A stretch of 64,000 nucleotides of DNA from Leucoraja erinacea (GCF_028641065.1 NC_073400.1:29450001-29514000); one strand, 5' to 3'. Shown: positions 644 through 63,945, numbered from the stretch's first letter. Translations and numbers: made by a program. Notes: generated by a model from the sequence alone, not told the origin.

Positions 644-734
644 CTTAGAGTCTCTTGTGAACACCGCGGTTGAGATACTCCAGATCACAAGCAGGAGAAA
701 GAACATCCAGCGCCCCACTTTCCATGAGATGTAA
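644..734 (-). CDS. Gene A TM exon (SYISWKVGRWMFFLLLVIWSISTAVFTRDSK), charged activating-type
   Basis: gcccag/gtaggg, 91 nt, phase 2 to 0; clear paralogue of the 91-nt exon at 44006-44096. Confidence 0.8.
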
Positions 735-3700
735 CTGGGCAAAGGTCAAGAAATACAGAGTCAATGGGAGGAAACGAGGCGGTTTATCTTTAAAGCATTT
801 ACCTGTTATCTGCTTCATAATCTTGGTGAAGTGGAGCGGGGCGAAGCGGTAGCGTCAGTGGAGACCATCTTTGTAAAAGAACGGGTGTTGGACTGGGGGG
901 GGGGGGGGGGGGGGGGGACAACATATGATCACCAATTGTTGACATCATTGCTGGGGCATGGCTACAAGACTGGGAATGAGAGACTACGCGGTTAAATGGA
1001 TTCAGAGAAGACAGATAAATAAGTCATGAGCTGGGACAGTGAATACAAAACAGATGGACACAAAATGTTGGAGAAACAGCGGGAGTGGCAGCATCTCTCT
1101 AGAGAGAAGGAATGCGTGAAGTTCCAGGTCGAGACCCTTCCTAAGACCGAGAATCACGGGAGAGGGAAACTGTGGATGTGGAAGGATACAAAGAACAGTG
1201 TGATACCCTGGAAGAAATAAAATGCAGCTGCAAGATTATAATAAAATCCATTTGGATAGACAGGAATAATAAAAACGGATCAATTCCAATAATGGAAGGG
1301 AGATGAGGCAATAAAAATGGAAACAGATGAGGCCAATTAATAAAATAAATTTAAAAATGATTATGCTTAATGACACACCCTGGATACTTCGTGGATCAAC
1401 GCGGTAGGTGTGTGGATGGAGGAATTGTGTTCGAAAAATCGGTTAAAGATTCGCTCATAACGGCGTGGCTTTCATGAACATTTGCTAACGCAAGTATAAC
1501 ACAAGAGTGTGATAGAAAGTCAGATATATTTCAAATGTGATAAGATAAATAACAACGTGTTATCACTTTCATGGCTATATTATGATTGAATATTTAATGG
1601 TTTCAAGTATCAACGAGTAAGAGAGAGTCAGTTAACTCATTTTGCTGTATTCGGTCTGATTCAAGACTATTTTCTCAAATTCTGCGCCAGCGATTTTCTG
1701 GTGTATGGCCCCACCAATGACAAGGTGTTACCACAAGTGATATCAAGGGGAGTGTGGTGTAGCCCATCATTCATAATGCATTTCCCTATCAGCATCACCC
1801 AAGAGCAAGTCACACCAAAGCCAAACTGGAAGACTAGGGTTTGGGAACTATATTAATCTCACAGCATGGGATGAGGTGAGTGATGGAGCAGTCATGTTGA
1901 ATACTGCAGGGAGCGCTCTCTGAAAAGCATCAAATGGAGGAACTTGTTCTTATCATCCAAGCATGTACACAACACAATGAGATGTAAACCAGTGCGATTC
2001 CCCTTCTGATGAGTTAACTAATAACTGGTTTGCAAGACACACTATGGAAACAGGCCATTTGGCCCTTCGGGTCTGTGCTGACCATCAACCGCATTTACAC
2101 AAATCCTGTGAGAAGAAGTTTGGTCTTTAGTTGTGGGAGTCAGTAGGTTTATAATAGACATGGGTCGATAGTCTATCTCCTGTGATGGAGACGGTATGAT
2201 CGAGAAAGGGGAGGAGGGGGTTGAAGATGGTCCAAGTGCGTTTGAGTGCCAGGTGGAGTGCAGGAGACCATTCCCTCTGCAACCCTGTGGAATGTCCCAA
2301 TTCTACTCCTATCCCTTATGACCTTATGACCTATACCTCCCTAGTTATCTCTCCCTTTCCCATCCAAACCACCCTCTCCCCAATTCCTTCCCCATTCAAC
2401 TGCAGGAAATGCAACATCTGTCCCTATAACTCCGCCCTCGACTCGGTCCAAGGAACTCAACAGTCATTTGAGATTCGGCTGAGTTAGCGTGAACCGCCTC
2501 GAACCTCATTTATTGTATCAGGTGTGGACTCTTATACATCAGCAAGACAAAACGTTGACTGGACGATCGTTTCACTGAACACATATGCTCAGTCCGCCTG
2601 GGGCTATTTGATCTCCCAGTTGCTAAACTATTTACCCCCCCCCCCCCCCCTCCCATTCCTACACTGACTGTTCTATTCTGGGCTTTCTCCATTGCCAGAG
2701 TGAGGCCAAATGGAAATTGGAGGAACAGCGCCACACATTTCGCTTGGGCATTTACAGCCAAGCGGTATAAATATTGATTTCTATAACTTCAAATAACCCT
2801 TGCACCCCCTTGCTCTCCGTCCCTCCCCCATCCTAGTCATTGTACCAATTTCACTGTTGTCTTGTAGTGTCTCATTGTCCGTACAACTCGTTTTCAGCTA
2901 GCCCACAGCTAACTATGGATCGTTTCATTCATCATCGTTACTTTTGTTGCATATCTTTCATTCAATGTTTTATATCTTTCTATATCACCGTCGATATCGC
3001 TCTCGTTTCCCTTTCCCCTGACTCACACTCTGAAGAAGGGTCTCAACCTAAAACGTCACCTATACCTTTTCTCCAGAGACGCTGTCTGACCCGACGAGTT
3101 ACTCCAGTTGTTTGTATCTATATTCAGTTTAAACCAGCATCTGCAGTTCCTTCCCACACAATGAAAGGCAAAATATGCAGAACACACATAGACGGCACCT
3201 AAGTTCGGGGTCTTGGCATTGTGAGGCTGTGGTTCCATTGGCTGTGTCTGGGCATTCAGATCAATAATCTCTCGGGCCTTTAATGCCAGTGAACGGAAGA
3301 CACAACTTTCTCCCAATTGAAGTAATCCCAATCAAAACACCAGTAATTAGTACATGGCACCTTTCATTGGAATCAGAGTAGTTTACCTTGATGAAGCATT
3401 GGATCCTTTCGAAGTTTCACAAGAATATTCAAGTCCTGTTAGAACAAGGAAATAAAAATCAGTTTCACTGATTTTCACTTGCTGTTGAACAAGAGAGCAT
3501 GCTTGTCCGATGTAAGGAGTTTATAGATTTAATAGACAGGGCAATGTTTCTCCAGTGTAATTTGTAGAAAATGGGAGATGCTTGCACAACTCAGGTAGAA
3601 CTCAGGTCGCCGACATTAGGGCGGCACAGCGGTAAGAGTTGCTGCCTTGCAGCGCCAGAGACCCGGGTTCAATCCTGACTACGGGCACAATCTGCACTGA

Positions 3701-6700
3701 CTTCGTATGTTCTCCCTGTGACCGCGTGGGTTTTATTCAAATGCTCCGGTTTTCTCCCACATTCTAAAGTCGTGCAGGTTTTGAGGTTAATTGCCTTCTG
3801 TAAATTGTCCCTAGTGAGTAGGATGGAATTGGTGCACCGGTTAAAGGCAGTTGCTTCCACCTGGATTTCTAAACCCAACTAAAGGAGGTGATTTCATGCG
3901 AGGGATATTGCCTGGGATGAAACATTACAGTTCGAAGGAGAAGGCTGGATAGATGGGGATTTTAATCCATATAGGAAAAGAAGGGGGAACCTATTACTGA
4001 TGTCACTGTAAAAATATTTTCAAGCTGTGTAAACATAAGAGGCAGTTCTAGCCGGGAAGCTGGTCTACACCAGCAATGGGAAATCCGTGGCTGGAGCCCA
4101 GCAACCAAGTATTGACAAATGGACCATAATATTATCATTTTAATCTTGATAAGTTAATTAAAGAACGTGCATGGATTTCAGGGTGTCGGGGGTTATGGGG
4201 AGAAGGCAAGAGAATGGGGTGAAGAGGGGAAGATACATCAGCCATGATTGAATGGTCTATTTCTGCTTCTATCACATGTGATTTTATGAACCACCCCACC
4301 CCCACTTCCCCTTCTTCTCCTCATCCCCTCCACTACTTACCAGTGCCGTCGATTTTCACTAGGAAACTGCAGGACACGTCATTGCTGGAGATGGACACGT
4401 TGACCATTTCACTGGATTTTGATCCTTTATTATTTGAGGCTGTGCAATAATATTGATGGTGCTGGTGTTTGAAGGATTGACAATGTAGATCCAGGGCATT
4501 GTTGTCTGAGATCTTTGAATCCCCAGATGGGGTCTTTTCATACCAGGTGTGGTTAATGGGAAGCGATCCCCGGACCGACTCACAGGACACTGTCACCGAG
4601 CCCCCGAGACAAGAGACATTGTCTGGTGACAGACACCCAAGCACAGGAACAGACACGGGTTCTGTGGGAAAGGAGCAAACAGTCAGACACTGAGTGAACA
4701 TCTGAAAATCAAACACTCGCCAATATCCACCATCTCTGTATCTTAGCCAGAGCCGCCAGGTTGGAATCTGACCCATCCATCTACATAGGGTCATAGAGGC
4801 ATGCAGTGTAAGAGCAGGCCTTTCGGTCTAATTTGCCCCCGCTGACCAACATGCCCATCCACACTAGTTCCACCTGCCCTTGCTTAGCCCATAAGCTTCC
4901 AAACGGAAGAGACCGTGCATTTACTCGATCTATTCGTCGTATGATTTTGTAGCTGCCATAAGATCATCCCTCATCTTCCTGCTCTCCCAGAAATAATGTC
5001 CTAGTCTGCTCAATCCCTCCATGGAGTTCAGACACTCAAGTCATGGCAGCATCCTTGTAAATCTTCTCTGCACCCAATCTTACTTGATAGCATCTTTCCT
5101 ATAACATGGTGATGAATACTGACCACAGAGCGGACATATCATCAGACAATCTTCGATTCTCTTTTACATTTCAGGAATTGCCAGCAGGAAAAAGGGAGCA
5201 TTGTTTATATAACTGTCGGACCCATCCCATCTACATAGATTCGTAGAGTCATACAGTAGAAACAGGCCCTTCGGCCTAACTTGCCCGCGCTGACCAACAC
5301 GCCCAATCTACACTAGTTCCACCTGTCCTTTCTTGGCCCTTAACCCTCTAAACATATCCTATTCGTGTAACTGTCCAATATTTTCTGAAATGTTACGTTA
5401 GTACCTGCCATAACTACTTCCGTCGGCATTTCGTTTCATGGACCTACCAATCTTTGTGTAAACACGTTACTCGCCAGGTTCCTGTTAAATCATTCCCCCC
5501 TGATATTAAAACTATGTCCTCTGGTTCCCGATTGCCCTACTCTGGGCAAAAGACTGTGTATTTACTCGATCTATTCCTCGCGTGATGTTTGTGATTTTTT
5601 AAAAAATTTAATAAATATTTTTATTAGAATCAATGTTCAGTAGTATATACCGTGTTTTACATATTACATTTAGTGTGCAACTTCTTGTTTTAAATTTATT
5701 AGTACACAGCAGCACCATCTCTCTTTGTTTTACAATTCCAGCATCTGCAGTTAATATTCTTTTAATCCGAGCCTCTGCTTTTAATCTGAACATTCAAACA
5801 CCTCATTAGTGCAACAGTATCACCATCAACAACTTTTTAATTTCCTTGCACAGAATAGTTGATAGTGATAATGTTGCACAAATGAGGTGTGTGATTGGCG
5901 GTATTGTAGAATTGTGTGTAGGGAGCGAATGGGAAAGTGGAATAATATAGAACTAGTGTGACCAGTGATCGCTAGTTGGTGAGGACTCGGTGGGTCGAAG
6001 GATCCGTTTCCATGTTACATTTGTAAACTACAACTAAATATCCGGGTGAACATGTTTCTGTAAACTCTACAAACCTTTCACATCTTTTATTTTATAAATC
6101 GGCGACCAGAACTGTACACCAGACTCCCACCTAACAAATATTTTGTCCGTTGCCAAGGTGGAGACATAAAGTCACCCATTGAGAAACCTACCTTCAGAAA
6201 CTTGGAGATGTACTTTAAATGTTGGTTCGCCAGGTGTAGTAATTCCACAGCTGTACCATCCTGTATCTCCAGAGTTAAGATCCTCCACAGTCACAGTAAA
6301 TATTCCTCGTGCCGGGTTATCTGACATTGACACTCTTCCACTCTGTCCATGTTCCCCATTTGTTTCCACTGCATGTGTACACTGGCGACTTGTCCCGTTG
6401 CACCAGAATTTTGTGTGTGAGCGGTACACTGCTGCATAATGACAATCGATTGTGATCGCTCGTCCCACAACCCCGTGTACTTCGCTCTCTACCCGCAGTG
6501 CACCTGAAACGGAAGGAATCATCTTTCATAAATTGAAGAGAAAAATTAGCCTTTCACAAACATATACATTATAGTATGCTTCAATGTGTACAGGGGAGTC
6601 CGCGCAATGATTTTCTTAACTCTGTTGAATTCCACCTAGATTGCGATGAGAGACATATACTGTACACCGACCCTCACCATCTGCACAGGTCGTTCCAAAG

Positions 6701-8599
6701 TGCTTCCCAGCCAATGTGGGTGTGAATGGTGAAGAATGATGCATTGAACACTGAGCCTGTTGCAATTGGAAGGCGCTGTCTAGGGAGTCTTGGTGAGTTG
6801 CTGCAGTGCATGGTGCAGATGGTCTAAACTGCTGCTGCTCTGCATCAGTGGGGGAGGTTGAGGATGGGGTGTCTATCAAGCGCGATTTTGGATCATGACA
6901 GACCAAGCACAAGTGTTCAGTGGAATTGTAGCCGCGGCCAGTGCTTCTTAAACTAGTGAATGGTTCACCCAAGGGTGAATGAAATTATTTTGGGGTGAAT
7001 TAGTTAATTTATGTGTTTTTTTGCTCATGTGACATAATTAATTATATATAAAATTATGCAAAAGGGAAAATAAGATGATAATAACCAAAAAAACATAAGA
7101 ACATTTAGTTGAGGGGGAATTACATCTTGTAATAAAGACTCAAGGGTGAATGACACTGAAAGATTTTAAGAAGAACTGCCATTCTATAAACTTGGTCACT
7201 CTGATTTAGACTCTATTCTGGACTTCCAATCTGAACGTCTCCACACCTACTGGGAAGTTCTTTTCAAAATTCTCTTTAACAAAATTAAGGGTTATACTTG
7301 ATGGAGTGACGGCCAAGTAGATTCCACTTTAATTTTGTGAGATTACTGGAATTTGACACAAATTACCAGTTAAAATCATGAAGATAATCATGAAATTGTA
7401 CACCCTTGATTAGAAATGATGGCGGATCCAAACAGAATGAATTTGGTGCGTTCTCCGACTCAAAGTGTGTGTGAGACCTTAAGTGGCAGCCAGAAATAAT
7501 ATTTTTAAGTTGGAAGGGCGAAATTTGATGGAATGCACTAAACACGTTGTGATAAGTGCACGCTTGTCTCTCCTTTGCTGAAATTGTTCAACACATCCCA
7601 GGTGGAAGCAACGGGCTATTATTTGCCAGTCCCCCAAACAAACTCTCGCATTTACACCAGGAGCAGCAATGATGCCGTCTGCAAATAACAAGAAATCCAT
7701 GACCATCACCACAAGGCGAATAGCAGCAGGTTCAGGGACACGAGAAGAACACTCACCTGCATTGTTCATTTCTGTCACATAACTGCACGTTCCTGCTCCT
7801 TTGAAGACTTTCACGTTGAGACTTTCACTGGATTTTGTCCCATGATTATTTGAGGCTGTGCAGTAATATTGACGGTGTTGCCCTCCGAGGATTTCACAAC
7901 TCAGATCCAGTTGATTGCCATACACGGTAGTTGAAACCCAATGCTCGTTCTTCTCAAACCATGTGTAACGGATGGGAAGGGATCCACGGACAGACTCACA
8001 CGACACTGACACTGAGCCTCCGAGACGTGAGGCATTTGCTGCTGATAGATATCTGAGCACAGGAGCAGACACGGGTTCTGTGGGAATGGAGGAAACATCC
8101 AGTCACCTGTATGAACAGTTAAAAACCTTGCTAAATCTCAACAACCCTTTATCTCAGCCCGAACCGTCCGGTTGATATCTCACCGGCTCATCTACATCTC
8201 TGTGAGTGTGCGAAGCCCAGAAACCGAAGAAGGTTAGAGTTATAGAGAACCGAAAGATGCCCATCACAACAGCTCATTCATGCCGACCAACATGTCTTTC
8301 TAGGCCATAGCCATATGTCCACGTTTCTCCCTTATCATTCGCAATGATCCCAATCTACGCAAATATCAAAGAAATATTTTAAATGCTGTTATTCTAACTG
8401 CCTCAACAACTTCCTCTGGCCGCAGGTTCCATATAAATATCACCCAATGTGTGGACAATGTTGTCCATCAGAACAGAAGTTGGGATGTTATGTTTCAGTT
8501 GTACATATGTTGTTGATGTCGAACTTGGGCGAATTGTGTTCAGCTTCAGCCACTCACCTGTACAAAAACATGCCATTACAGTAAGTGACAGCTACTACT

Positions 8600-8653
<54 letters not shown>

Positions 8654-11600
8654 ACCCCCTCCACTCTTTAAATAGTTCCCATTGCGTCCGTCCTCCACTT
8701 TTTGATTCCACACATCGTGGGAAAATGAACATGCTTCTCGTGATTGATACATTTCTATAAGTTCCTCGCTCAATCATTTCCACACCAAGGAATGAAGTCT
8801 GAGTTTGTCCAATCGCTCCCTGCGTCAATCACGTCCTGTCCAGGCAGTTCGGACCAGGGGGCTAACCTGCCCCGGGTGGACTGAACGCAGTCTGTTGAGC
8901 TCTGGGGACTGATTCCCTGTTTATTATTCTCCGTGTATTCAGACCGTGAGCAACACTTGTTTCTCACTGATCTCTCGGATTATTAGTTTGAGTCGGAATG
9001 CAAACCTCTGACAGGGTGACATTTCATACAGTTCAGAGGCAGGGAAATGTGCTGAGCATCCCACTTGAAGTGGGTGGCCGCTCAGTGGGACAGAGCCTGC
9101 ACTGGGTGAGAGCAACATGAGTGGGGTTTCCCGACCCCCGCCCGCTCCCCGCAGGTCTCTGCACTGCCGCGGAGCCTCGGGATATCGGTGCTGCCCTGAC
9201 CCTTCCCGGAGAAAACATGGACCAGGCATTTCAGTGGAGACGTCAAGTCCATCGCTACGAAACGTACCGTCAGATACTTGGAGATGTACGGAAAACATTG
9301 GATGGTCGGCAGACGTTCTAATTCCACAGATGTATCTTCCTGTATCTCCAGAGTGAAGATCCTCCACAGTCACAGTAAATATTCTTAGTGCCGGTATATC
9401 TGTGATGGACACTCTTCCACTCCGTCCGTGTTGCCCATTTGTTTCCACCATATCTGTACATTGGCGACCCCACCCACGGCACCAGTATTTTGTGTGTGAG
9501 CGGTACTCTGTTGCATAGTGACAATCGATTGTGATCGCTCTTCCCACATCTCCTGTTACATTCTTCTTCCCCCAAACTGCAACTGAAATGGAGGGGAAAA
9601 ACTTTTAGATGGAGAGCAAATGAACTGTTTAATGGAAATAGATACATTTCGAAGATCACATGAAAGAAAACATAAACGTTCCATGATGTGTCATATTGCT
9701 TCACGCCCAATGTCTCCGGTCTGAAGTGCAGGCAGTGCTGTTATTGTACCAGTTGTGTCAGTGTTCTGTCCCCGGGGTCAGTACAATTTGGATTCACTTC
9801 CCACTCCAGATCCCAGAGCAGAAACTGGGCTGGAATCGCAATTCGGTACTGAGGGAGCGCGGCAGTGTTGCAGGAGCTGCCTTTCAACAATCCCTGGCGG
9901 TGCCCGGCCTCTCACCCCACAGAAAGACCCACTTTGCTATTGAATTGGCGGTGCCGCCGGCTGCGCTGCCAACATTCTTCTCTCAACCGACACTGGGCCG
10001 GACCCGTGTTTAGATATTCACCGCCTTTACAACGCCCTGACTGAGGACAGTGGACGGACGGGTTACAATAAAGCGGATCAAAAGATAAGGAGCAGGATGT
10101 TTGAAGGGTATAAATAAATATTTTTAAACCGAGAAGATAGAGGTACCTGAATTGCCTCAATGGACGAGGTGCTGGTAAGTGGGATGAGTATTGATAGTAC
10201 TGAATGGTCAACATTAACACAGTGACCCAAATGCGATACCAACGTCTAGGAGTTAACTGTGGCCACATTTACTGATAATTTCTGATCGCTTCACATATTT
10301 GAGTGTCGGTCATGTGGAGATGATGGAAAGTGAAAATGCTTGGACTGATGTCACTGCAAACCTAGTTTAAAGCTGTGTAAACATAAGAGGCAGTTCTAGC
10401 CCGGAAGCTGGTCTACACCAGCACTGGGAAATCTATTTATGGAGCCCAGCAACCAAGTATTGACAAATGGGCCATAATTCCATCATTTTAATCTTGATAA
10501 CGTAATTAAATAACGTGCATGGATTTCAGGGTGTCGGGGGTTATGGGGAGAAGGCAGGAGAATGGGGTGAAGAGGGGAAGATACACCAGCCATGATTGAA
10601 TGGTCTATTTCTGCCGCTATCCTATGAACCACCCCGCCCCCACTTCCCCTTCTTCTCCCCATTCCCTCCACTACTTACCAGTGCCGTTGATTTTCACCAG
10701 GACACTGCAGGGCACGTCACTGCTGAAGATGGACATGTTGACCATTTCACTGGATTTTGATCCATGTTGATTTGAGGCTGTGCAATAATATTGATGGTGC
10801 TGGTGTTTGAAGGATTGACAATGTAGATCCAGGGCATTGTTGTCTGAGATCTTTGAATCCCCAGATGGGGTCTTTTCATACCAGCTGTAGTTAATGGGAA
10901 GGGATCCCCGGACCGACTCACAGGACACTGTCACTGAGCCCCCGAGACAAGAGACATTGGCTGGTGACAGAAACCCAAGCACAGGAACAGACACGGGTTC
11001 TGTGGGAAAGGAGCAAACAGTCAGACACTGAGTGAACATCTGAAAATCAAACACTCGCCAATATCCACCATCTCTGTATCTTCGCCACAGCTGCCTGGTT
11101 GGAATCTAACCCATCCATCTACTTAGAGGCATATAGTGTAGAAGCAGGCCAACATGTCCATCCACACTAGTTCCACCTGCCCTTGCTTAGCCCATAAGCT
11201 TCCAAACGGAAGAGACTGTGCATTTACTCGATCTATTCGTCGCGTGATTTTGTAGCTACCGTAAGATCATCCCTCATCCTCCTGCTCTCCCAGAAATAAA
11301 GTCCTAGTCTGCTCAATCCCTCCCTGGAGTTCAGGCACTCAAGTCATGCTTCAGGCTCTCAACCGACACTGGGCCGGACCCGTGTTTAGACATTCACCGC
11401 CTTTACAACGCCCTGACTGAGGACAGAGGACGGACGGGTTACAATAAAGCGGATCAAAAGATAAGAGACCATAGGTGCAGGAGTAGGCCATTCGGCCCCT
11501 CGAACCAGCACCGACATTCACTATGATCATGGCTGATCATCCACAATCAGTACCCCGTTCCTAAATTACCATATACCCCCTAGTGCCGCTATCATTTGGA

Positions 11601-19652: not shown

Positions 19653-19716
<64 letters not shown>

Positions 19717-23404: not shown

Positions 23405-23722
23405 CTAAGAAACAACGCTGGCATAAATTGGCTGTGCAGAATCTTGCAGGTTGCCAGGGGACCTGGCATTGCCCTTTCGGGTACGGCTTGGTAAGTTAAC
23501 ATTTGCATAGGTGACATTGTCCTCACTGGTGACAGAATGCTTTCCTTGTGAGATGACGTCGTCTTTGTTGGTAACGGACTGTCCCATCCTCGATCGCCTT
23601 TGAAACTGCACGGCTGCATACATGATCCCGCTGTCATTGTTGGCCAACTGGTCAGCTGCCTCGTCGTCTCGGGAATGCTGCAGATTCACACGAGCAGCTC
23701 TTTCTCGCCGTGTTGGTATTCC
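23405..23722 (-). CDS. Gene B terminal ITIM-bearing exon
   Basis: ctgttag acceptor, phase 0, open to TAG; two canonical I/VxYxxV motifs plus a terminal IYASV. Confidence 0.88.
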   Translation of the reverse strand, partial: GIPTRRERAARVNLQHSRDDEAADQLANNDSGIMYAAVQFQRRSRMGQSVTNKDDVISQGKHSVTSEDNVTYANVNLPSRTRKGNARSPGNLQDSAQPIYASVVS

Positions 23723-44970: not shown

Positions 44971-45063
44971 CTATTCCATTTATAATGTAAGTGTTTTTGT
45001 TAACTTTGAGGACAAAGAGCTGAGGGACAAACAGGTGTTGCCCTGGTCTCTACGAATCAAGCA

Positions 45064-45100
45064 ATGTGGGTTCCGATTCTTCTAATTTGTTCCTTGCCGG
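45064..45100 (+). CDS. Gene D leader exon (MWVPILLICSLP)
   Basis: 37 nt, GTGAGT donor. Confidence 0.85.
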
Positions 45101-51100: not shown

Positions 51101-54026
51101 TCAGTTGCAAAAGATCATGAACAGCTTAGTCCCAACAGCCATCATGCTATTAAACTCTACAGCCGTCAGTAAGCTCTGAACTACGTAGACTATTGTGGTT
51201 ATTAATGCACTATTTATGTTTGTTTTTCTTTATGTTCATTTGTGCGCGGTCTACGGTCTACATGCGGTCTCAATGTTTACATATTCTGTTCTGCTGCTGC
51301 TTAAGAATGTTATTGTCCGATGGGGGACAGATGACAGATGACAATAATACACCCTTGACTCTCTCGATGTCATACTGAGAACCGTCACCATCTCCATGCA
51401 AGAGCCCGTGTCAAACAACTGTGCTCTCCTGCTGGACTACCAATGAAAAATGGGAAACTTAATTTAATTTTCTCCTCTCGGCAGAGTATAAATATCATTG
51501 TGGGCGCCCGACCACGGAATCAGCATCGACACAATCTGTCAACACAGAAACAACATCGGACATTCCCCCAGAGGAAACGTTTCAACCCCGTACTACTGAA
51601 AGGTACAACCAAAATTATTGGTTTCCACGTTGGTACTATTTTTATGTGAGCGGAGATTGGGGTAAAATTCCCTCATTTACTCGCAAACACCAAAAGCATG
51701 TGGATAAAACGATTTTTACTCATACTGAATATTGGGAATTGAATATACACAATTCTCACCTGTAAGGCAAGTTTCTCACACTAACATGTTTAATGCCACG
51801 GGCATAGAAGTGGAAGGTTATGTAATTACTTGAGAACGTAGCTCGTGAAAGTGAACATGTTGGCTCCGAGATTAGAATCTCCTATCAAAGATGCTGCCTG
51901 CCGGATAAGAAATTTCAAACTACTCATCTCTGGATCAGCGTCTGAAGAAGGCTTTCGACCGGCCACATTGCCTATCAACACCCTCCAGAGATGCTGCCTG
52001 ACCCGCCGAGTTTCTCCAGCATTCTGTGTCTTTCTTTTGTAAACGATTATCTTTAGTTCCTTGGATCTCCGTAATATTTACAAAGTTGAAAGGGATAATC
52101 CCTGATGGATTTGGATAATGTTTACCCTTGAAGCATCATCACCATCGTGGGTCATTTTCACACTGTTTGCGGGACTTCTTTTTCCAAATAGATTTTCACT
52201 GTACCTCGGTACACGTGACAAAAATATACTAAACCAAAGTAAACCAAATTGCACTAAACCTGCTGTAACCAGGTCGGCGCCTATGTTTGAGTTTAGTTTA
52301 AGTTTGGTTTATTGTCACGTGTTTCGAGGTTCAGTGAAAAACTTTTGTTGTGCGCTAACCAGTCAGCGGGAAGACAATGCATGGTGACAATCGAGTCAGC
52401 CACAGTGTACGGATGCCCGATAAGGGGAATAACGCGAGTGCAGGGTAAAGCCAGTAAATTCCGATCAAAGATGGTCTGGGGGTCTCTAATTAGGTAGATA
52501 GTAGTTTAGTCTGAAGAAGAATCTCGACCCGAAACGTCGCCCATTCCTTCTTTCCATAGATGCTGTAGTTCAGGACTGCTCTCTTTCTCAAACTGCCCTT
52601 CATTTACCGCACTTAACACACATTCTGTGGTTCTTGGTTTCTTGGTTCTCCAAAATATTCCAAATGGAATTTAAATCTGGAGGTGGTGGAGGGAGGACTT
52701 AAGCCAGAAAGGGTAAAAATATGGAACGCTTCACGAATTTGCGTGTCATGCTTGCGCAGGGGCCATGCTAATCTTCTCTGCGGTAAAGTGGACCTGCTCA
52801 ATGCTAGACATTTTTTCTTTCAGCGATGAACCAGGGCTGACTTCCTATTCTCGGTACCACATACCCACCTACATCAGTGTGATGGCTGTCCTTCTTCCGT
52901 TGGCGTTTGTTGCTGGTCTGTTTTGGTACCTGAAACGTAAAAACAGGGGTATGTTTTTTGTTTTTCTTTCATAGTTTGATGATTACGTGAGAATTTGCAA
53001 CATAGTGTATTTTTTTTAAGTTCTAATGGACAGAGCTGCACATTTGAAGTGCTCTCGTCATAATGTAGGAAGCAAGGATGCTTTTATGAGTTAACAACCA
53101 TTTAAAAAAAAGTTTTAGTGTTGTAGTGTGGAACCATAACCTGCAGCCGAAATCAGCCCACGACGACCATCGATACTAATCGGTTCACGCTGACCATCGA
53201 TCAGCCGTTCCCACTACTTCCATGCTACTCCACTTTCTCTTCCACATCCTGCACAATTTCCCCACTTCCTCATAATTCGACAGAGCAGATTTTTGATCAG
53301 TGCGTGGAATCATGCTGCAGCAGCGGGTCTGGTGGTTACACAAGTCTGAATGCAACTCATGGGTATTTACTGTCCCTGACATGGTCCTTTCAACAGTTGT
53401 ATTTCCAATGTTATATTTTCCAGAATTCAAGTGGATCACATATTACAGAGATGGCAGTGGAGACAACCAGGTAAAGGTGTAACATGTTATTTCTTCAAAT
53501 GTTTCAATATATTCGTAAGTTCATAAATGTCTGGAGCAATATTTCGCCGTTTTGGTCCATCAAGTCTACTCTGTCATTCAATCACGGCTGATCGATCTTA
53601 CCCTCTCAACCCCATTCACCTCCCTTCGCCCCATAACCCCTGACACCCGTCCTCATCAAGCATCGATCAACCTCTACCCTAAAAATATCCATTGACTTGA
53701 TCTCCGTAGACTTCTGTGGCAATGAATTCCAGATATCGACATGATTTGTTTGCAGTGGGTTATACCAGCTCCATCACCACTCGTTGCACGCTAGATTGAA
53801 TCGTCTACACAAAGCGACTCCCATCTTACTTCTTTGAGCCCCATCAGCAAATTGTATACTGCACAAGTTAATGCCTATGAATTACTTGCATTCAGAGTAA
53901 TTATGAGTAAAGAATCGATCCATTGTTCTGTTTGATAATTGTTGCGTTAGAGTTTCATTCATTACAAAATAATTTGTATCTTTCTTTTAGGAAATTGTAG
54001 CTCTGGAAGGGATTGACGATATTTGA
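45064..54026 (+). CDS. Gene D: MDIR/CD300-like receptor with a short ITIM-less tail (333 aa). Exons 45064-45100, 48029-48343, 49949-50272, 51485-51602, 52824-52948, 53424-53470, 53991-54026
   Basis: Consistent phases and the same exon architecture as gene B; uncharged TM; early TGA at 54024-54026. Confidence 0.8.
46711..46900. repeat. 30-bp minisatellite, about 6.3 units (GCTGGCAGCTCAGTCACTCAGGCCTGGTGG)
   Basis: Directly visible periodicity inside the Helitron. Confidence 0.9.
47325..47545. repeat. Imperfect tandem repeat of about 55-60 bp, 3-4 units (GCCAAACA...TTGCAGTTTCAAGCA)
   Basis: Directly visible inside the Helitron. Confidence 0.7.
48029..48343 (+). CDS. Gene D Ig V exon
   Basis: tttcag/gtacgt, 315 nt, open. 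Confidence 0.92.
49949..50272 (+). CDS. Gene D Ig C2-type exon
   Basis: cccacag/gtaagt, 324 nt, open. Confidence 0.92.
51485..51602 (+). CDS. Gene D stalk exon (EYKYHCGRPTTESASTQSVNTETTS...)
   Basis: cggcag/gtacaa, 118 nt, Thr/Ser-rich. Confidence 0.8.
52715..52780 (-). pseudogene. RNU6: U6 snRNA 5'-truncated retrocopy (U6 nt about 42 to the 3' end)
   Basis: Reverse complement reads CAGAGAAGATTAGCATGGCCCCTGCGCAAGCATGACACGCAAATTCGTGAAGCGTTCCATATTTTT, one mismatch to vertebrate U6 as I recall it; GGTAAA on both flanks. Confidence 0.93.
52824..52948 (+). CDS. Gene D TM exon (...IPTYISVMAVLLPLAFVAGLFWYLKRKNR)
   Basis: tttcag/gtatgt; hydrophobic helix followed by a basic stretch. Confidence 0.88.
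53424..53470 (+). CDS. Gene D first cytoplasmic exon (EFKWITYYRDGSGDNQ)
   Basis: ttccag/gtaaag, 47 nt. Confidence 0.8.
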
Positions 54027-54874
54027 CATCTGCAAAGACCAACGCGCCAGCTCGCCACGTGGCTAGCAATGTACATACACTTTCCTATGCAACAGTGTAA
54101 TTTGAATGGAACTGGGTGGCAGGGCACTTGGTTACTAACAGCAAAATGTCACCCACAGCCGACAACTGTCAAACTAACCCCCCGCCCCGCCACCCAACCT
54201 CCCCTGCCAATAATTGCTATAGTGCAGTAGCTAATTACACATGGAATATAAGCTCCGTTGCTTTTTACTTCCCCCTTGCTTCAATGTTGCATTGACGTCC
54301 TTCTACCGTAGTCTAACCACATACTTTGTTTAACGTGTTTTGTTCCAAGGAGTTCTTTCCAATTCCACCCCCACCCCCACTAGTAGATTATTATTCGCAA
54401 ATTTAATTAATTGTCGTTAACCTTCTAGTTCTACATCTTTGCTGATGGCGAAAATCGTCAAGTTTCTCATTCTAAACGTTGCATTTGGAATCTTGGTGGG
54501 ATTGGGCAAGAACAGCCCAAGTGAGAGGTGTTTGGGGAAAGGTGAGGTGCGGAACCGAGTGCTCGTTCCCAGTTAGTCAGCTCTGATCTATTGCAAACGC
54601 ACGAGTAGACACTCTGATATTGAAAGAGGCAATGGCTAATGTAATGGTGGAATGACAACTGCAGGAATTTGAAGGGCTGAATAAAACATGTACGAGTATG
54701 GATAAAGATGGGATCATTGTTTATAAAGCTCAATAATGATTGTAGGTATATGAGTAAATACATCAAACGGTGTCTTATCATACCAGAACCCAACAACTGA
54801 AGATGAAAGTTACAAAATGAGCTCAGCATTTTGCGACTCAGTGCGTCAGGCGACAGTTCTGAAGAAAATGGATC

Positions 54875-54905: not shown

Positions 54906-54924
54906 CCTGATGGTTCAGCCTGAT

Positions 54925-54965
<41 letters not shown>

Positions 54966-58860: not shown

Positions 58861-61800
58861 ATGTGGATTCCCATTCTTCTCATCTCCTCGCTGCCGGGTG
58901 AGTGAAAGCCAGATGTTGATATTCCAATGTTCAATGTTAGTTGGGGTCCCGTGCACCCTTTCCACAGCAGAGATGGTTATGTGTGTGTACACATGTAATG
59001 GGGGAAATGGAACTCAGTGCATTGTGGTGATGGATCTGAATTCACATTTGAATATCTAGACTTTGTTCGAGTATTGATGAAAGGCATAAAATAGCGAATA
59101 AATTTGGAGCAGATATTCCAAGACACCTGGACCGAAGAACAGAGGTTCCAACATCACCAGGAAGTTAATTCTACACTAACAAAATGTGTTTAAAACTGAG
59201 GTGGAAGTCACGATTGTGGACTCATTGTGTCAGTTCAAATGTCCCCTGCATTTGTCCAACTCAACTTTGTCTTAAACCCAACAATTCCCCGGAGTCTAAA
59301 ACTGAACCACGGTCCGCGCTCTATCCACCCACTCCCAACTCTCTCTCCATCCTCTCTCCCGTCTGCGGCACAGTCGTGCTGAAAGGTCCAAGGCGAGCCG
59401 GGGTCATCGGGAATAGAACATGGCCCAGATGACCAGCGGGTTCCAAATTCAGTTTAGTTTATTGTCACGTGTACCGAAGTAGAGTGTTTTAGTTGCGAGC
59501 TCCTCCGTCAGCAGAAAGACAATCCATGATTGTTATCGATCATCTTACAGTGCATAGATACAAGAAAAGGAAATAACGTTTAGTGTAAGGTAAAGCCAGC
59601 AAAGTCCGATCAAGGGTAGTCCGAGGGTCATCAGAGAGGTAGATGGGAGTTCAGCACCGCTCTCTGTTTGTGGTAGGATGATTGAGATGCCTGATAACAG
59701 CTGGGATGAAACTGTCCCTGAATCTGGCGGTGTGCGTGTTCACGCTAGTAACGCTCTCCAGTAAGGGACCCGCTTTATTGTAACCCGTCCGTCCTCTGTC
59801 CTCAGTCAGGGCGTTGTAAAGGCGGTGAATGTCTAAACACGGGTCCGGCCCAGTGTCGGTTGAGAGATGAATGTTGGCAGCGCAGCCGGCGGCACCGACA
59901 ATGAAATAGCAAAGTGGGGTCTTTCTGTGGGGTGAGAGGCCGGGCACCGCCTGGGATTGTTGAAAGGCAGCTCCTGCAACACTGCCGCGCTCCCTCAGTA
60001 CCGCACTGCGATCCCAGCCCAGTTTCTGCTCAGGGATCTGGAGTGGGAAGTGAACCCTAATTGTACTGACCCGGGGACAGAACACTGACACAACTGGCAC
60101 AATAACATCACTGCCTGCACTTCAGACCGGAGACATTGGCTGTGAAGCAATATGACACATTATGGAACGTTTTAAGTTTTCTTTCATGTAATCTTCAAAA
60201 TGTATCTATTTCCATTAAACAGTTCATTTGCTCTCCATCTGAAAGTTTCTCCCCTCAGTTTCAGGTGCAGTGCGGGGAAAGAGGGAGGTAAGAGGAGTTG
60301 TGGGAAGAGCGATCACAATCGATTGTCACTATGCAGCAGAGTACCGCTCATACACAAAATACTGGTGCCGTTGGTGGACTATCCAATGTACAGTTTTACT
60401 GGATACAAATGGACAACACGGACGGAGTGGAAGAGTGTCAATCACAGATAACCCGACACGAGAAATATTTACTGTGACTGTGGAGGATCTTCAGTCTGGG
60501 GATACAGGATGGTACAGCTGTGGAGTTTATAAATTTGGCTGGGATCCAATGTTTGACGTTCATCTGCAAGTATATGATGGTACGTTTCGCAGCGATTGGC
60601 TTGACGTCTCCACTGAAATGCCTGGTCCATGTTTTCTCCGGGAAGTGCCACTTTAAGTGGGATGCTCAGCACACTTCCCTGCCTCTGAACTGGAAAAAAA
60701 AATCTAATAATCCGACAGGTACAGATCAGTGAGAAACAGGTGTTGCTCGCGGTCTAAATACCCGGAGAATAATAAACAGGGAATCAGTCCCCAGAGCTCA
60801 ACAGACTGCGTTCAGTGCTCCCGGGGCAGCGCAGCCCGCTCCCCGCCCCCACCTCGGGGATCTGTCACTTTCTCCCCCACCGCGCGCGCTCTCTCTCTCT
60901 CTCCCTCTGCCCCGTCAACGCGCCCCCACCCCCTGCAGCCACTGTCCACCCACCGCCCGGCAGCCAGCCAGCCTCTCCACCCGGACATTTCCCTGGTGGT
61001 AAGGAGAATAATTCATCTTTCGCCCCATCACCCGTCGCACACAGTATATAATCCTCCAACATTTTCGCCACTTCCACCGGAATCCCACAACTAGCCACAT
61101 ATTTCCATCTCCACCGCTTTCTCATCTCCGAAGAGACCGTTCCCTCCGCAACTCCCTGGTCAACTCGTCCTTTCCCACCCAAACCACCCCGTCCCCAGGT
61201 ACCTACAACTGCAGCAGATGCAACACCTGGCCCTATACCTCCTCTGTTCACTCCTTCTAAGGACTCCAACAGTCTTTTCGGGTGAAGCAGCGGTTCACTT
61301 GAATCTTCTCTAAACTCTTCTACTATATCCGCTGTTCCATGTGTGAACAAGATGGGAGACCAAGCGCAGACTCGGCGATCGTTTCGCTGAACAACTGCGC
61401 TCAGTCTGCCTCGGCCTACGCTAATTCCCGTTTGCTAAACACTAACTCCCCCTCCCATTCCCAAACTTACCTTTCTGTCCTGGACCTCCTCCACTGTCAG
61501 AGTGAGGCCAAACGCAAATTGGAGGAACAGCGCCTCATATTTCGCTTGGGCAGCTTACAACCCAGCGGTTTAAATATTGACTTCTCAAACTTCAAGTAAC
61601 CGTTGTTGTACCCCTGTCTCAATCCCGCCCTAGTTCTCCATTTAGATTCACTGTCCTCTTCATTATATTTTACAGATTGTATGCCTCGTTGTCACCTTCC
61701 CTTCGTCTGACAATGATCCATTCTGCATTTCCGTTTAACATTGTCAACTTTTAGCACTTTTTTTCCCTCCTTATTCTTCCATTACTCTTCTGTCACCTAG

Positions 61801-63945
61801 ACCTGACTCTCAGGCTGCAGAAGGCTCTCGACCCGATTCTTCACCCATTCCTTCTCTCGAGAGATGCTGCCTGCCCTGCATAGTTACGATAGCATTTTGT
61901 GTCTATCTTAAAGGGATCGTAATTAATTTTCGCCTGCATTGAACAGGGTTATTCGCACGCTGGTCTTCATCAGTGAGAACATTCAGAACATAATTTGAGA
62001 TAATATGCTTCAGACGTGCAGATGTTGAGTCAACATATTGGGAATTGTGTTCAGCTTTAGTCCCTCAGCTCCTAGAAAAGTGCCGTTGAGGTGGACAGCG
62101 TGCAGAAAGGTTTTAGGGCGACGCTGCCTGGACAGGATGGGATTGACGCAGGGAGCGATTGGACAAACTCAGACTTCATTCCTTGGTGTGGAAATGATTG
62201 AGCGAGGAACTTATAGAAATGTATCAATCACGAGAAGCATGTTCATTTTCCCACGATGTGTGGGATGAGGAAGTGGAGGACAGGGGTAATGGGGACTATT
62301 TAAAGAGGGGAGAATAGTAAGGTGTCACTTACTGTAATGGCATGTTTTGTACAGATGAGTGGCCGAAGCTGAACACAATTCGCCCAAGTTCGACCTCAAC
62401 AACATATGTACAACTGAAACATAACATCCCAACTTCTGTTCTGAGGGACAACATTGTCCACACATTGGGTGATATTTATATGGAACCTGCTGCCAGAGGA
62501 GGTTGTTGAGGCAGTTAGAATAATAGCAGTTAAGATGCATTTTGGACAGTTGCGTAGATTTGGGATCATTGCGAGTGATAAGGGAGAAACATGGACACAA
62601 GGAAATGGCCCAGAAAGACATGTTGGTCGGCATGAATGAGCTGTTGTGATGGGCATCTTTCGGTTCTCTATAACTCTAACCTTCTTCGGTTTCTGGGCTT
62701 CACACACTCACAGAGATGTGGATGAGCCGGTGAGATGTGAACCGGACGGTTCGGGCTGAGATAAAGGGCTGCTGAGATTTAGCACGTGTTTGGTTTTGAA
62801 CTGTTCATACAGGTGACTGAATGTTTGCTCCATTCCCACAGAACCCGTGTCTGCTCCTGTGCTCAGATATCTGTCACCAGCAAATGCCTCACGTCTCGGA
62901 GGCTCAGTGTCAGTGTCCTGTGCGTCTGCCAGTGGATCCCTTCCCATCCATTACACATGGTGTGAGAAGAACGAGCATCGGTGGTCAACGATCTTGTCTG
63001 GCAATCAACTGGATCTGAGTTGTGAAATCCTCGCCGGCCAACATCGTCAATATTACTGCACAGCCTCAAATAATCTTGGGACAAAACCGAGTGAAATACT
63101 CAACGTGAAAGTCTTCAAAGGAGAAGGAATGTGCAGTTATGTGACAGAAATGAACAATGCAGGTGAGTGTTAACTCATTCACCCTTGGGTGAACCATTCA
63201 CCAGTTTAAGAAGCACTGGCCTAGGCCACAGTTTCGCTGAACACTTGTGCTTGGTCTGTCGTGACCCAGAATCGCGCTTGAAAGACACCCCATTCTCAAC
63301 CTCCCCTGCTGATGCAGAGCAGCAGCAGTTTACACCATCTGCACGATGCACTGCAGCAACTCACCAAGACTCCCTAGACAGCGCCTTCCAATTGCAACAG
63401 GCTCCGTGTTCAATGCATTATTTTTCACCATTCACACCCACATTGGCTGGGAAGCGCTTTTGGAACGACCTGTACAGGTGGTGAGGGATAGTGTACAGTA
63501 TCTGTCTCTCATCGCAATCTAGGTGGAATTCAACACAGCTAAGAAAATGATTGGGCGGAGTCCCTTGTATACTAGAATGTGTATGTTTGTGAAAGGCTAA
63601 TTTTGCTCTTCAATTTATCAAAGATGCTTCCTTTAGTTTCAGGTGCACTATGGGCTGAGAGCGAAGTAAGAGGGGTTCTGGGAAGAGCGATCACAATCGA
63701 TTGTCACTATGCAGCAGTGTACCGCTCACACACAAAATACTGGTGCCGTGGGACAAGTCGCCAGTGTACACATGTGGGTGAAACAAATGGGAAGAGCGGA
63801 AGAGCGTCATTCACAGATAACCCGGCACGAGGAATATTTACTGTGACTGTGGAGGATCTTCACTCTGCTGATACAGGATGGTACAGTTGTGGAATTACTG
63901 CACCTGGCGAACCAACATTTAAAGTATATCTCCAAATATCTGAAG
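58861..63945 (+). CDS. Gene E (5' part): inverted paralogue of gene A. Exons 58861-58897, 60265-60579, 62842-63162, 63643-63945; continues beyond the window
   Basis: Leader MWIPILLISSLP (an in-frame upstream ATG lies at 58849); V, C2 and V exons with canonical splice sites. Confidence 0.88.
60265..60579 (+). CDS. Gene E Ig V exon 1
   Basis: tttcag/gtacgt, 315 nt. Confidence 0.92.
60985..61910 (+). mobile_element. Penelope-like element fragment in a gene E intron
   Basis: GETKRRLGDRFAEQLRSV (GIY-YIG-like) at about 61354-61407; RKLEEQRLIFRLGSLQPSGLNIDF C-terminus; absent from the paralogous gene A intron. Confidence 0.7.
62842..63162 (+). CDS. Gene E Ig C2-type exon
   Basis: cccacag/gtgagt, 321 nt; paralogue of 7757-8077. 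Confidence 0.92.
63643..63945 (+). CDS. Gene E Ig V exon 2
   Basis: tttcag/gtaggt, 303 nt (9 nt shorter than its paralogue 6192-6503, frame preserved). Confidence 0.9.

What the first reader, a model, noticed from the sequence alone, without database searches (positions are those of the whole stretch)
644..63945. Paired activating/inhibitory receptor cluster built from interchangeable V-C2 modules
Seen: five related genes share one exon kit (37-nt leader, about 315-nt V, about 321-nt C2, YxC stalk, TM) and carry different signalling ends. A and C have a charged WKVGRW TM, B has an uncharged TM plus ITIMs, and D has an uncharged TM plus a decayed tail. Ectodomains range from 0 to 6 Ig domains, and all Ig exons are phase 1-1 and so freely shufflable. 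Known: the V domains have the CD300/pIgR/TREM-type second disulfide, and skate MDIRs are a described family of this kind; an Arg near the outer end of a TM is how LILRA, OSCAR and GPVI pair with FcR-gamma. Inference: this is a rapidly remodelling paired-receptor locus of chondrichthyan leukocytes. The strictly alternating (V-C2)x3 activating form may be undescribed.
Basis: partly seen in the sequence, partly recalled or inferred. Interest (0 to 1): 0.8.

Follow-up and report, generated by a model that had tools for sequence, protein, structure and literature searches.

The report
Little skate MDIR immune-receptor gene cluster
This stretch of little-skate DNA holds five neighbouring genes of a shark-and-ray immune-receptor family that was first described in 2006 (MDIR); they are built from mix-and-match antibody-like exons with switch-on-type or switch-off-type signalling ends, so the finding is real and tidy but not new.

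Summary
The window contains 13 intact Ig exons (7 V-set, 6 C2-like), all AG/GT-bounded and phase 1-1. It also has five near-identical 37-nt leader exons, four YxC stalk exons and four TM exons, which together make five genes (A-E). Both N gaps lie outside coding exons.

RefSeq proteins map onto the window at 100% identity, so it comes from Leucoraja erinacea. The family is the known MDIR family of skates.
- Gene B is the MDIR2 orthologue (75.6% identity). It is already in RefSeq with exactly the seven exons I derived, including two canonical ITIMs.
- Genes A and E match MDIR3/MDIR5 domain for domain (76-85%). The TM exon of A is 90% identical to the WKVGRW TM of MDIR5.
- Gene D has a premature stop before an out-of-frame ITIM.
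- Gene C has no Ig exons.

The V domains are of CD300/pIgR type.

RNA reads gave only trace coverage, so splicing of gene A, adaptor pairing and leukocyte expression remain inferred. RefSeq's models for A and for D+E look like chimeras. Unchecked first-reader notes place further clusters of this kind on the adjoining windows.

The parts
15021..15057 (-). Gene A leader exon (37 nt, MWIPILLIASLP, donor GTGAGT)
   Evidence: identical to the N-terminus of RefSeq P0170
13135..13449 (-). Gene A V1 exon (distal-V subtype; 315 nt, or 321 nt from the upstream tandem AG)
   Evidence: 100% identical to P0170 residues 14-119
10679..10999 (-). Gene A C2 exon 1 (C2a subtype, 321 nt)
   Evidence: 85% identical to MDIR3 d5 and MDIR5 d4; closest solved structure is FCRL5
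9268..9582 (-). Gene A V2 exon (distal-V subtype, 315 nt)
7757..8077 (-). Gene A C2 exon 2 (C2b subtype, 321 nt)
   Evidence: 80-83% identical to MDIR3 d3 and MDIR5 d2
6192..6503 (-). Gene A V3 exon (membrane-proximal V subtype, 312 nt)
   Evidence: 80-85% identical to MDIR3 d4 and MDIR5 d3
4341..4661 (-). Gene A C2 exon 3 (C2a subtype, 321 nt)
3387..3435 (-). Gene A stalk exon (49 nt, GLEYSCETSKGSNASS, phase 1 to 2)
   Evidence: same length and motif as the MDIR5 and MDIR3 stalks; not used in RefSeq model P0170
644..734 (-). Gene A TM exon (91 nt, YISWKVGRWMFFLLLVIWSISTAVFTRDSK, phase 2 to 0)
   Evidence: 90% identical to MDIR5 residues 456-486
34495..34531 (-). Gene B leader exon
31726..32046 (-). 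Gene B V exon (321 nt with the upstream acceptor, as in RefSeq)
29948..30256 (-). Gene B C2 exon (309 nt)
27979..28096 (-). Gene B stalk exon (118 nt, PVYSC...)
26777..26868 (-). Gene B TM exon (92 nt, uncharged TM, LILIIVLSGTGVLLIVVFAFLLLYLRNRHR)
25958..26004 (-). Gene B cytoplasmic exon 1 (47 nt, ESKCNTQRRDRANGTQ, phase 1 to 0)
23405..23722 (-). Gene B terminal exon with IMYAAV, VTYANV (ITIMs), PIYASV and the stop codon
40076..40112 (+). Gene C leader exon (MWILILLISYLP)
42565..42667 (+). Gene C stalk exon (103 nt, LEYPC...)
44006..44096 (+). Gene C TM exon (91 nt, CMIWKVGRWVLFALLVVWTISVTWYTRKPQ); no Ig exon or Ig relic between the leader and this exon
45064..45100 (+). Gene D leader exon (MWVPILLICSLP)
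   Evidence: N-terminus of RefSeq P0022
48029..48343 (+). Gene D V exon
49949..50272 (+). Gene D C2 exon (324 nt)
51485..51602 (+). Gene D stalk exon (118 nt, YKYHC...)
52824..52948 (+). Gene D TM exon (125 nt, uncharged TM; the acceptor homologous to that of A is lost and an upstream acceptor is used in RefSeq)
53424..53470 (+). Gene D cytoplasmic exon 1 (47 nt, EFKWITYYRDGSGDNQ)
53991..54110 (+). Gene D decayed terminal exon: reads EIVALEGIDDI then stops (53991-54026); an LSYATV ITIM relic lies downstream in another frame
58861..58897 (+). Gene E leader exon (MWIPILLISSLP)
60265..60579 (+). Gene E V1 exon
62842..63162 (+). Gene E C2 exon (C2b subtype)
63643..63945 (+). Gene E V2 exon (proximal-V subtype); the gene runs off the window

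Best explanation
The window is part of the MDIR (modular domain immune-type receptor) gene cluster of the little skate, Leucoraja erinacea. It holds five type-I receptor genes assembled from one set of exons: a 37-nt leader; CD300/pIgR-type V exons; FCRL-type C2 exons; a Cys-containing stalk; a TM exon; and cytoplasmic exons. All Ig exons are phase 1-1.

Gene B is the MDIR2 orthologue. It is an inhibitory receptor of the form V-C2, uncharged TM and two ITIMs, and would presumably recruit SHP-type phosphatases after tyrosine phosphorylation.

Genes A and E are MDIR5-like. They pair the same kinds of ectodomain modules with a short-tailed TM that has Lys and Arg at its outer end (WKVGRW). The likely working mode is pairing with an acidic ITAM adaptor of the FcR-gamma or DAP12 type. 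Gene A carries one extra V-C2 module, giving (V-C2)x3.

Gene D is a former inhibitory gene whose tail now stops before the ITIM. Gene C has lost all Ig exons and, in this window, has no terminal exon; it is probably a relic.

The locus diversifies by duplication, inversion and exchange of whole modules through recombination in introns, with fast amino-acid change in the distal V domains.

Shown here: the exon anatomy, the reading frames, family membership, and the identity of gene B with a RefSeq model. Inferred: the transcript structure of gene A, adaptor and phosphatase coupling, the ligand, and the expressing cell type.
For: Anatomy: searches give all exons, with consistent phases.

Species and annotation: RefSeq L. 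erinacea proteins map at 97-100%. P0249 (413 aa) equals gene B exon by exon. P0170 covers the gene A leader and its Ig exons, and P0022 covers D and E.

Family: B is 75.6% identical to MDIR2 over its full length. The A and E domains are 76-85% identical to the positionally equivalent domains of MDIR3 and MDIR5 and fall into four Ig subfamilies. The TM of A is 90% identical to the TM of MDIR5. The stalk-to-TM order matches the cDNA-derived MDIR5 and MDIR3 sequences.

Domain types: the closest solved structures for V are pIgR D1, CD300A/CD300LF, NKp44 and TREM2, with both extra cysteines aligned. The closest for C2 is FCRL5 (summed E 1.8e-46).

Conservation of the TM type: W.VGRW TMs with short RRDESEP-like tails occur in many rays and sharks.

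Module exchange and fast evolution: the internal duplications and the A/E inverted duplication are about 88-91% identical. Introns flanking the V exons are 93-97% identical while the exons themselves are 84-88%, and dN/dS of distal V pairs is about 1.0-1.4.

RNA: a few reads fall on the A exons only, all in the orientation expected for a minus-strand RNA.
Against: No exon-exon junction of gene A was seen; RNA depth on its exons was 0.1-1.5x in four runs of unknown tissue.

RefSeq model P0170 skips the stalk and TM of A and continues into four more Ig exons beyond the window.

No terminal RRDESEP-type exon for A or C lies in the window. A transposon fragment follows both TM exons.

The Lys and Arg of WKVGRW sit at the membrane boundary and could be simple stop-transfer residues. 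As I recall the abstract of the original MDIR paper, MDIR5 was listed as lacking typical activating or inhibitory motifs; I could not re-read the paper.

No adaptor, ligand or cell type has been tested.
Confidence: 0.85

Rival explanations
1. The RefSeq gene models are the true transcripts. On this view gene A is the front of a 10-Ig-domain, TM-less (secreted) 'Fc receptor-like 5' protein that runs on into the next gene's Ig exons, D and E form one transcript, and the stalk and TM exons of A are unused relics.
For: P0170 (1078 aa) joins A_C3 directly to further V-C2-V-C2 exons beyond the window. P0022 (884 aa) joins D to E. All Ig exons are phase 1-1, so such joins stay in frame.
Against: P0170 ends by reading into an intron (…NGTGK) and has no TM or tail. 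P0022 bridges D and E through non-conserved sequence and contains a second internal leader (…MDKTMWIPILLISSLP…). Both look like typical chimeric predictions in a tandem gene family. Each unit has its own intact leader exon. The stalk and TM of A keep their splice sites and frame and are 90% identical to the cDNA-derived MDIR5. Complete (V-C2)x3-stalk-TM proteins are predicted in other species.
Confidence: 0.1
2. Much of the window is a gene graveyard. Only gene B is a working receptor. On this view A (no terminal exon found, transposon after the TM), C (no Ig exons, no terminal exon), D (truncated tail) and possibly E (RefSeq reads its TM exon out of frame for lack of a stalk exon) are decaying duplicates.
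For: Terminal exons are missing for A and C and the same transposon follows both TM exons. D has a premature stop and an out-of-frame ITIM. In P0022 the E part ends in the frame-shifted TM reading VTSHGKWGAGC…, which is not a membrane span. RNA depth on gene A is only trace level.
Against: All 13 Ig exons, all leaders, all stalks and all TM exons are free of stops and keep canonical splice sites. An activating receptor needs only a few residues after its TM, and read-through after the TM exon of A would add 18 residues before a stop. The terminal exon of A may simply lie beyond the window edge. The truncated D would still be a membrane protein.
Confidence: 0.3
3. The WKVGRW TM does not make these receptors activating. 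On this view the basic residues are juxtamembrane anchors, and these forms are non-signalling or decoy receptors, or they signal in another way.
For: K and R sit within the first five residues of the hydrophobic stretch. As I recall (own knowledge, not re-read), the original description listed MDIR5 among the forms without typical motifs.
Against: The W.VGRW motif and the short acidic tail are conserved from rays to hexanchiform and orectolobiform sharks. Such conservation is unusual for a mere anchor. An Arg 3-5 residues into the TM is the known arrangement in FcR-gamma-coupled receptors such as GPVI, OSCAR and LILRA (established knowledge).
Confidence: 0.25

Closest known systems
MDIR2 of the clearnose skate (Rostroraja eglanteria; UniRef name 'Modular domain immune-type receptor 2', P0250)
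   Same: Gene B has the same architecture: leader, V, C2, stalk, uncharged TM, a 16-residue ESKCNT… exon, and a tail with IMYAAV and a second tyrosine motif. It is 75.6% identical over 413 aa.
   Different: It comes from a different species (an orthologue). The C-terminal SxYxxV-type motif reads PIYASV in both proteins.
MDIR5 and MDIR3 of the clearnose skate (P0204, P0184)
   Same: Genes A and E use the same four Ig subfamilies in the same relative order. They also share the 49-nt-type stalk (G.EYSC…) and, with MDIR5, the YISWKVGRW…LLLVIWSISTAVFTR.SK TM, which is 90% identical.
   Different: MDIR5 is V-C2b-V'-C2a (4 domains). Gene A has an extra N-terminal V-C2a module (6 domains). MDIR3 is V-V-C2-V-C2 with an ITIM tail. 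The terminal exon (KRDESEPRHSAHELQ in MDIR5) was not found for A inside the window.
Predicted (V-C2)x3 receptors of other elasmobranchs, for example Pristis pectinata P0189, Hypanus sabinus P0195 and Hemitrygon akajei P0191 (activating-type TM); and Rhinoraja longicauda P0021 and L. erinacea P0171 (ITIM tails)
   Same: They have the same strictly alternating six-domain ectodomain, with either TM type.
   Different: They are automatic predictions named 'polymeric immunoglobulin receptor-like' and are not studied proteins. They are paralogues or orthologues, not the same gene.
Mammalian CD300 (CMRF35) family
   Same: The V domain has the extra C-C' disulfide, and the solved CD300A and CD300LF structures match at E 1e-17 to 1e-20. 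Both families are paired activating and inhibitory gene families.
   Different: CD300 proteins have a single V domain and no C2 domains. Their activating members use a different TM.
Polymeric Ig receptor (pIgR)
   Same: The V exons give their best summed match to pIgR, and to D1 in particular, including the NR.HT.KYWCR loop region.
   Different: pIgR is a tandem of V-like domains without C2 domains, with a long sorting tail. It is a single-copy transport receptor, not a paired family.
FCRL5 and other Fc receptor-like proteins
   Same: The C2 exons align to six FCRL5 domains (PVS.PVL…GSLPI.Y…YYCTA.N). ITIM signalling occurs in both families.
   Different: The solved FCRL5 chain matched only the C2-type query and did not appear among the V-domain matches; from established knowledge, FCRLs are chains of C2/I-type domains without CD300-type V domains. 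The alternation of V and C2 is the MDIR hallmark.

Membership tests
MDIR (modular domain immune-type receptors, skate) | Sequence orthology or paralogy to the named MDIR proteins | tested here: met
   B versus MDIR2: 75.6% over the full length. A and E domains versus MDIR3 and MDIR5: 76-85% by position. TM of A versus MDIR5: 90%.
MDIR (modular domain immune-type receptors, skate) | Ectodomains built from a few Ig subfamilies in variable number and order (one to six domains, four subfamilies, as I recall the original abstract) | tested here: met
   Four clear subfamilies: distal V, proximal V, C2a and C2b. There are 0, 2, 2, 3 or more, and 6 Ig exons per gene.
MDIR (modular domain immune-type receptors, skate) | Domains resemble CD300/CMRF35, pIgR, TREM, NKp44 and FcR homologues | tested here: met
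   PDB sequence searches, (V; C2).
MDIR (modular domain immune-type receptors, skate) | Members with a charged TM, with ITIM tails, or with neither | tested here: met
   A and C: WKVGRW. B: two canonical ITIMs. D: neither.
MDIR (modular domain immune-type receptors, skate) | Transcribed in immune tissues | tested here: inconclusive
   Only trace reads on gene A exons in four RNA runs of unknown tissue, and no junctions.
Paired activating/inhibitory receptors (functional class, for example KIR, LILR, CD300) | Closely related ectodomains joined to opposite signalling modules within one cluster | tested here: met
   The same Ig subfamilies occur with the WKVGRW TM (A; E by RefSeq) and with ITIM tails (L. 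erinacea P0171 is 85-92% identical to A and E exons; B and the Amblyraja activating protein P0009 share a near-identical C2).
Paired activating/inhibitory receptors (functional class, for example KIR, LILR, CD300) | The activating form associates with an ITAM adaptor through a basic TM residue; the inhibitory form recruits SHP phosphatases | not testable with these tools
   Only the motifs are present. This needs co-expression and pull-down experiments.
CD300 family proper | Single V-type Ig domain ectodomain | tested here: not met
   Every Ig-bearing gene here alternates V with FCRL-type C2 exons.
pIgR | Tandem of four to five V-like domains without C2, and a single transport receptor gene | tested here: not met
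   The architecture is V-C2 alternation in a multigene cluster.

The most novel reading that the evidence does not exclude
MDIRs may be the Ig-binding (Fc or polymeric-Ig) receptors of sharks and rays. They alternate the two domain types that mammals use to bind immunoglobulin: the pIgR/Fc-alpha-mu-R/CD300-type V domain, including the pIgR D1-like NR.HTKYWCR loop, and the FCRL/FcR-type C2 domain. The paired activating and inhibitory forms would then tune leukocyte responses to IgM- or IgNAR-coated targets.
Probability: 0.1. Interest if true: 0.7.

Novelty: new member of a known kind. Interest (0 to 1): 0.25.

Why it matters
The family (MDIR) and its logic have been known since 2006, and the genes are already in RefSeq, so this is no discovery. 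What is useful is the exon-level map. It assigns little-skate genes to MDIR2-like and MDIR5-like types. It shows that RefSeq's 'Fc receptor-like 5' and LOC129708990 models are probably chimeras of neighbouring genes. It documents module gain, tail decay and an Ig-less copy side by side, which makes a compact example of how paired immune-receptor clusters evolve by shuffling phase-1 exons. It also makes explicit that MDIR ectodomains alternate CD300/pIgR-type with FCRL-type domains, which bears on the origin of vertebrate Ig receptors.

Tried and rejected
RNA evidence. The look-up of sequencing runs gave no indexed RNA holder, only raw RNA runs with the same species label. Read laying on 7700-13500 with four runs gave 0.1-1.5x on the Ig exons and no listed exon junctions. 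The heavy depth came only from transposon repeats.

Terminal exon of A and C. Motif searches and tblastn with homologue tails (PHSL, RRDESEP.HSAHELQ and others) found nothing on the correct strand. They found only an orphan exon on the minus strand at 45587-45534.

Intermediate cytoplasmic exon of B. The NNETQ motif scan and a splice-site filter both failed. It was then found by nucleotide similarity to the corresponding exon of D and confirmed by RefSeq P0249.

Ig relics in gene C. None were found by tblastn or blastn.

The original MDIR paper (PMC3701310) and a review (PMC2823954) are not held, so what I say of their text is from memory and is marked as such.

Joined models. I did not send any spliced model to a search tool; exons were searched one by one, and full-length comparisons used only proteins that the tools returned.

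Rejected readings. These are not CD300 proper or pIgR, because the architecture is not met. They are not a chance ORF pattern, given E-values down to 1e-85.

Full report
**1. What is in the sequence**

The window is 64 kb with two N runs, 22612-22922 and 30649-30995. tblastn with one V-exon and one C2-exon peptide from the window finds 13 Ig exons (E 1e-34 to 1e-85). Seven are V and six are C2.
- On the minus strand: V 32040, C2 30256, then V-C2-V-C2-V-C2 from 13449 down to 4341.
- On the plus strand: V 48029, C2 49949, V 60265, C2 62842, V 63643.

Pfam calls the V exons V-set (E 4e-10 to 5e-15) and the others Ig_2, Ig_3 or Ig_C17orf99. Exact bounds: every exon is AG/GT-bounded, 303-324 nt long, a multiple of three, phase 1-1 and free of stops. 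First V exons have a tandem acceptor 6 nt upstream; this acceptor adds the residues VSG, as seen in the cDNA-derived MDIRs.

A pattern scan for ATG+34 nt+GT finds five nearly identical hydrophobic leaders, MW[IV][PL]IL[LI][IV]x[SY]LP followed by GTGAGT. They define five genes:
- A, minus strand, leader at 15057
- B, minus strand, leader at 34531
- C, plus strand, leader at 40076
- D, plus strand, leader at 45064
- E, plus strand, leader at 58861

**2. Membrane and signalling ends**

Stalk exons with a YxC motif were found by similarity: A 3435-3387 (49 nt), B 28096-27979 (118 nt), C 42565-42667 (103 nt) and D 51485-51602 (118 nt). All shift the phase from 1 to 2, which is the phase the TM exons need.

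The TM exons of A (734-644) and C (44006-44096) encode WKVGRW followed by a hydrophobic stretch. The TM exons of B (26868-26777) and D (52824-52948) are uncharged.

B continues through a 47-nt exon (26004-25958, ESKCNTQRRDRANGTQ) into a terminal exon (23722-23405). That exon carries IMYAAV and VTYANV, which are canonical ITIMs, and PIYASV, which is non-canonical.

D has the homologous 47-nt exon (53424-53470). Its terminal exon reads EIVALEGIDDI and then stops, and an LSYATV relic lies further on in another frame.

The leader-to-TM interval of gene C holds no Ig exon or Ig relic.

No terminal exon of the kind seen in homologues (RRDESEP.HSAHELQ) is present for A or C. The same transposon fragment follows both TM exons (10-448 matches 44753-44316 at 91%).

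**3. The gaps**

Gap 30649-30995 lies in the V-to-C2 intron of B. RefSeq protein P0249 and the MDIR2 protein both go from V directly to C2, so no exon is missing there. Gap 22612-22922 lies about 480 nt past the stop codon of B. I did not fill either gap.

**4. Source and existing annotation**

Word searches and one full HMMER search returned RefSeq proteins of Leucoraja erinacea that map on the window at 97-100%.
- P0249 (LOC129708882, 413 aa) contains the peptides of my seven gene B exons in order, with no residue left over.
- P0170 ('Fc receptor-like protein 5', 1078 aa) begins with the leader of A and contains its six Ig exons (five map at 97-100%; the sixth, A_C1, is visible in the printed sequence). 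It then skips the stalk and TM of A, runs on through four more Ig domains from beyond the window, and ends inside an intron.
- P0022 (LOC129708990, 884 aa) is gene D fused to gene E through non-conserved sequence, with a second leader in its middle.

I read P0170 and P0022 as chimeric predictions, which are usual in tandem families. I could not prove this.

**5. Which family**

The searches returned proteins named 'Modular domain immune-type receptor' 2, 3 and 5 from the clearnose skate (P0250, P0184, P0204).
- Gene B is 75.6% identical to MDIR2 along its whole length.
- A pairwise matrix of all Ig domains shows four subfamilies, with positional orthology at about 72-85%. A_V1 and A_V2 group with MDIR3 d1/d2 and MDIR5 d1. 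A_V3 and E_V2 group with MDIR3 d4 and MDIR5 d3. A_C2 and E_C1 group with MDIR3 d3 and MDIR5 d2. A_C1 and A_C3 group with MDIR3 d5 and MDIR5 d4.
- The TM exon of A is 90% identical to the MDIR5 TM, and the 49-nt stalk matches those of MDIR5 and MDIR3.

So gene A is an MDIR5-type receptor with one more V-C2a module at its N-terminus. B is the MDIR2 orthologue. D is the most divergent member (50-60% to all others).

Against solved structures, the V domain is closest to pIgR D1, CD300A and CD300LF, NKp44 and TREM2, and both cysteines of the extra disulfide align. This agrees with what I recall of the 2006 description by Cannon et al. (Immunogenetics 58:362, cited in PMC3031540). I could not re-read that paper.

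**6. Is (V-C2)x3 new?**

No. I built HMMs from the window's V and C2 exons and scored the 260 or so proteins returned by the searches. Of the 113 with both domain types, 17 have exactly V-C-V-C-V-C.
- Some have ITIM tails, for example L. erinacea P0171 and Rhinoraja P0021.
- Others have a W.VGRW-type or closely related TM and a short tail: Pristis P0189, Hypanus P0195, Hemitrygon P0191 and P0210, and the sharks Heptranchias (P0202/P0203) and Chiloscyllium (P0207).

The family spans rays, sharks and a chimaera hit.

**7. How the locus changes**

Self-comparison shows that gene E with its upstream region (57640-64000, plus strand) is an inverted copy of gene A (16287-6137) at 87-92%, but without one V-C2 module. 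Inside A, the C1 block (10344-11348) copies the C3 block (3996-5045) at 89.6%, and the V1 block copies the V2 block at 89%.

Around the distal V exons the flanking introns are 93-97% identical while the exons are 84-88%. For example, A_V2 versus B_V is 84% in the exon and 95% over 293 nt of the downstream intron. dN/dS of distal V pairs is about 1.0-1.4, against about 0.5-0.7 for the proximal V and the C2b exons. Similarity also changes partner at exon borders: the upstream intron of A_V2 resembles those of E_V1 and A_V1, while its downstream intron resembles that of B_V. This is what module exchange by recombination in introns, together with fast change of the ligand-facing V domains, would produce. 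It is not a formal test of selection.

**8. Expression**

No indexed RNA run holds the stretch. Four raw RNA runs bearing the same species label were laid on 7700-13500. They gave 0.1-1.5x on V1, C1, V2 and C2, all with the first mate on the plus strand, as expected for a minus-strand RNA in a stranded library. Depth in non-repeat intron was zero, and no junction reached the listing threshold. This is compatible with low expression but does not test the gene model.

**9. Verdict**

However, the object is the known MDIR family in a species whose genome is already annotated, and the six-domain activating architecture is already predicted elsewhere.

The mechanism stands as follows. ITIM inhibition for B and adaptor-coupled activation for A and E rest on motifs and on analogy to KIR, LILR, CD300, GPVI and OSCAR (established knowledge). 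Nothing has been tested. C and D look like decaying copies.

First-reader notes from this scan (unchecked) place further genes of the cluster on both adjoining windows.

**10. Limits of this work**

Noticed in passing
window 45534-45587 (minus strand): An orphan exon on the minus strand looks like the terminal exon of an activating MDIR: acceptor CCGCAG, then WGRDESDSALVYGNNEC and a stop. It lies inside the first intron of gene D, which is on the plus strand, about 1.4 kb past the TM exon of gene C. It may be the terminal exon of C flipped by an inversion, or a fossil of a lost gene.
   Followed up: partly
window 8868-9267, 31324-31725, 48344-48875, 60580-60978: The intron just downstream of distal V exons is conserved among otherwise distant paralogues (A_V2 versus B_V: 95% over 293 nt, against 84% in the exon). 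It stays open in the exon's frame for about 100 codons (…LDVSTEMPGPCFLREGSGQHRYPEAP…). It could reflect recent gene conversion, a regulatory element or a fossil exon; I did not resolve which.
   Followed up: partly
window 13450-13878, 9583-10011, 59835-60264: About 430 nt upstream of distal V exons is also conserved at 89-93%. On the opposite strand it carries a repeated ORF (…STIRVHFPLQIPEQKLGWDRSAVLRERGSVAGAAFQQSQAVPG…). It may be an old repeat that travels with the V module.
   Followed up: no
window 12-594, 44316-44850, 24668-25482, 11386-12743, 16564-16860: Reverse-transcriptase and other transposon fragments occur here, and several copies are dispersed through the window. The pieces at 11580-12550 are covered at 100-1700x on both strands in all four RNA runs, so this repeat family is highly transcribed somewhere in the genome.
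   Followed up: no
window 644-15057 and 45064-64000: RefSeq models P0170 ('Fc receptor-like protein 5') and P0022 (LOC129708990) appear to be chimeras of neighbouring MDIR genes. P0170 skips the stalk and TM of A and ends inside an intron. P0022 contains two leaders and reads the TM exon of E out of frame (…VTSHGKWGAGCFFSCL).
   Followed up: partly
window 40076-44096: Gene C keeps an intact leader, stalk and WKVGRW TM exon in frame but has no Ig exon or Ig relic. If expressed, it would be a small membrane protein of about 75 residues consisting of a stalk and an adaptor-binding-type TM. This is a separate first-reader note.
   Followed up: partly
window 8599-8663, 19654-19715, 21443-21506, 33500-33560: Short G/C-rich triplet-like runs occur here; they read as poly-Pro or poly-Gly in ORF lists and match one another at 84-98%.
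   Followed up: no
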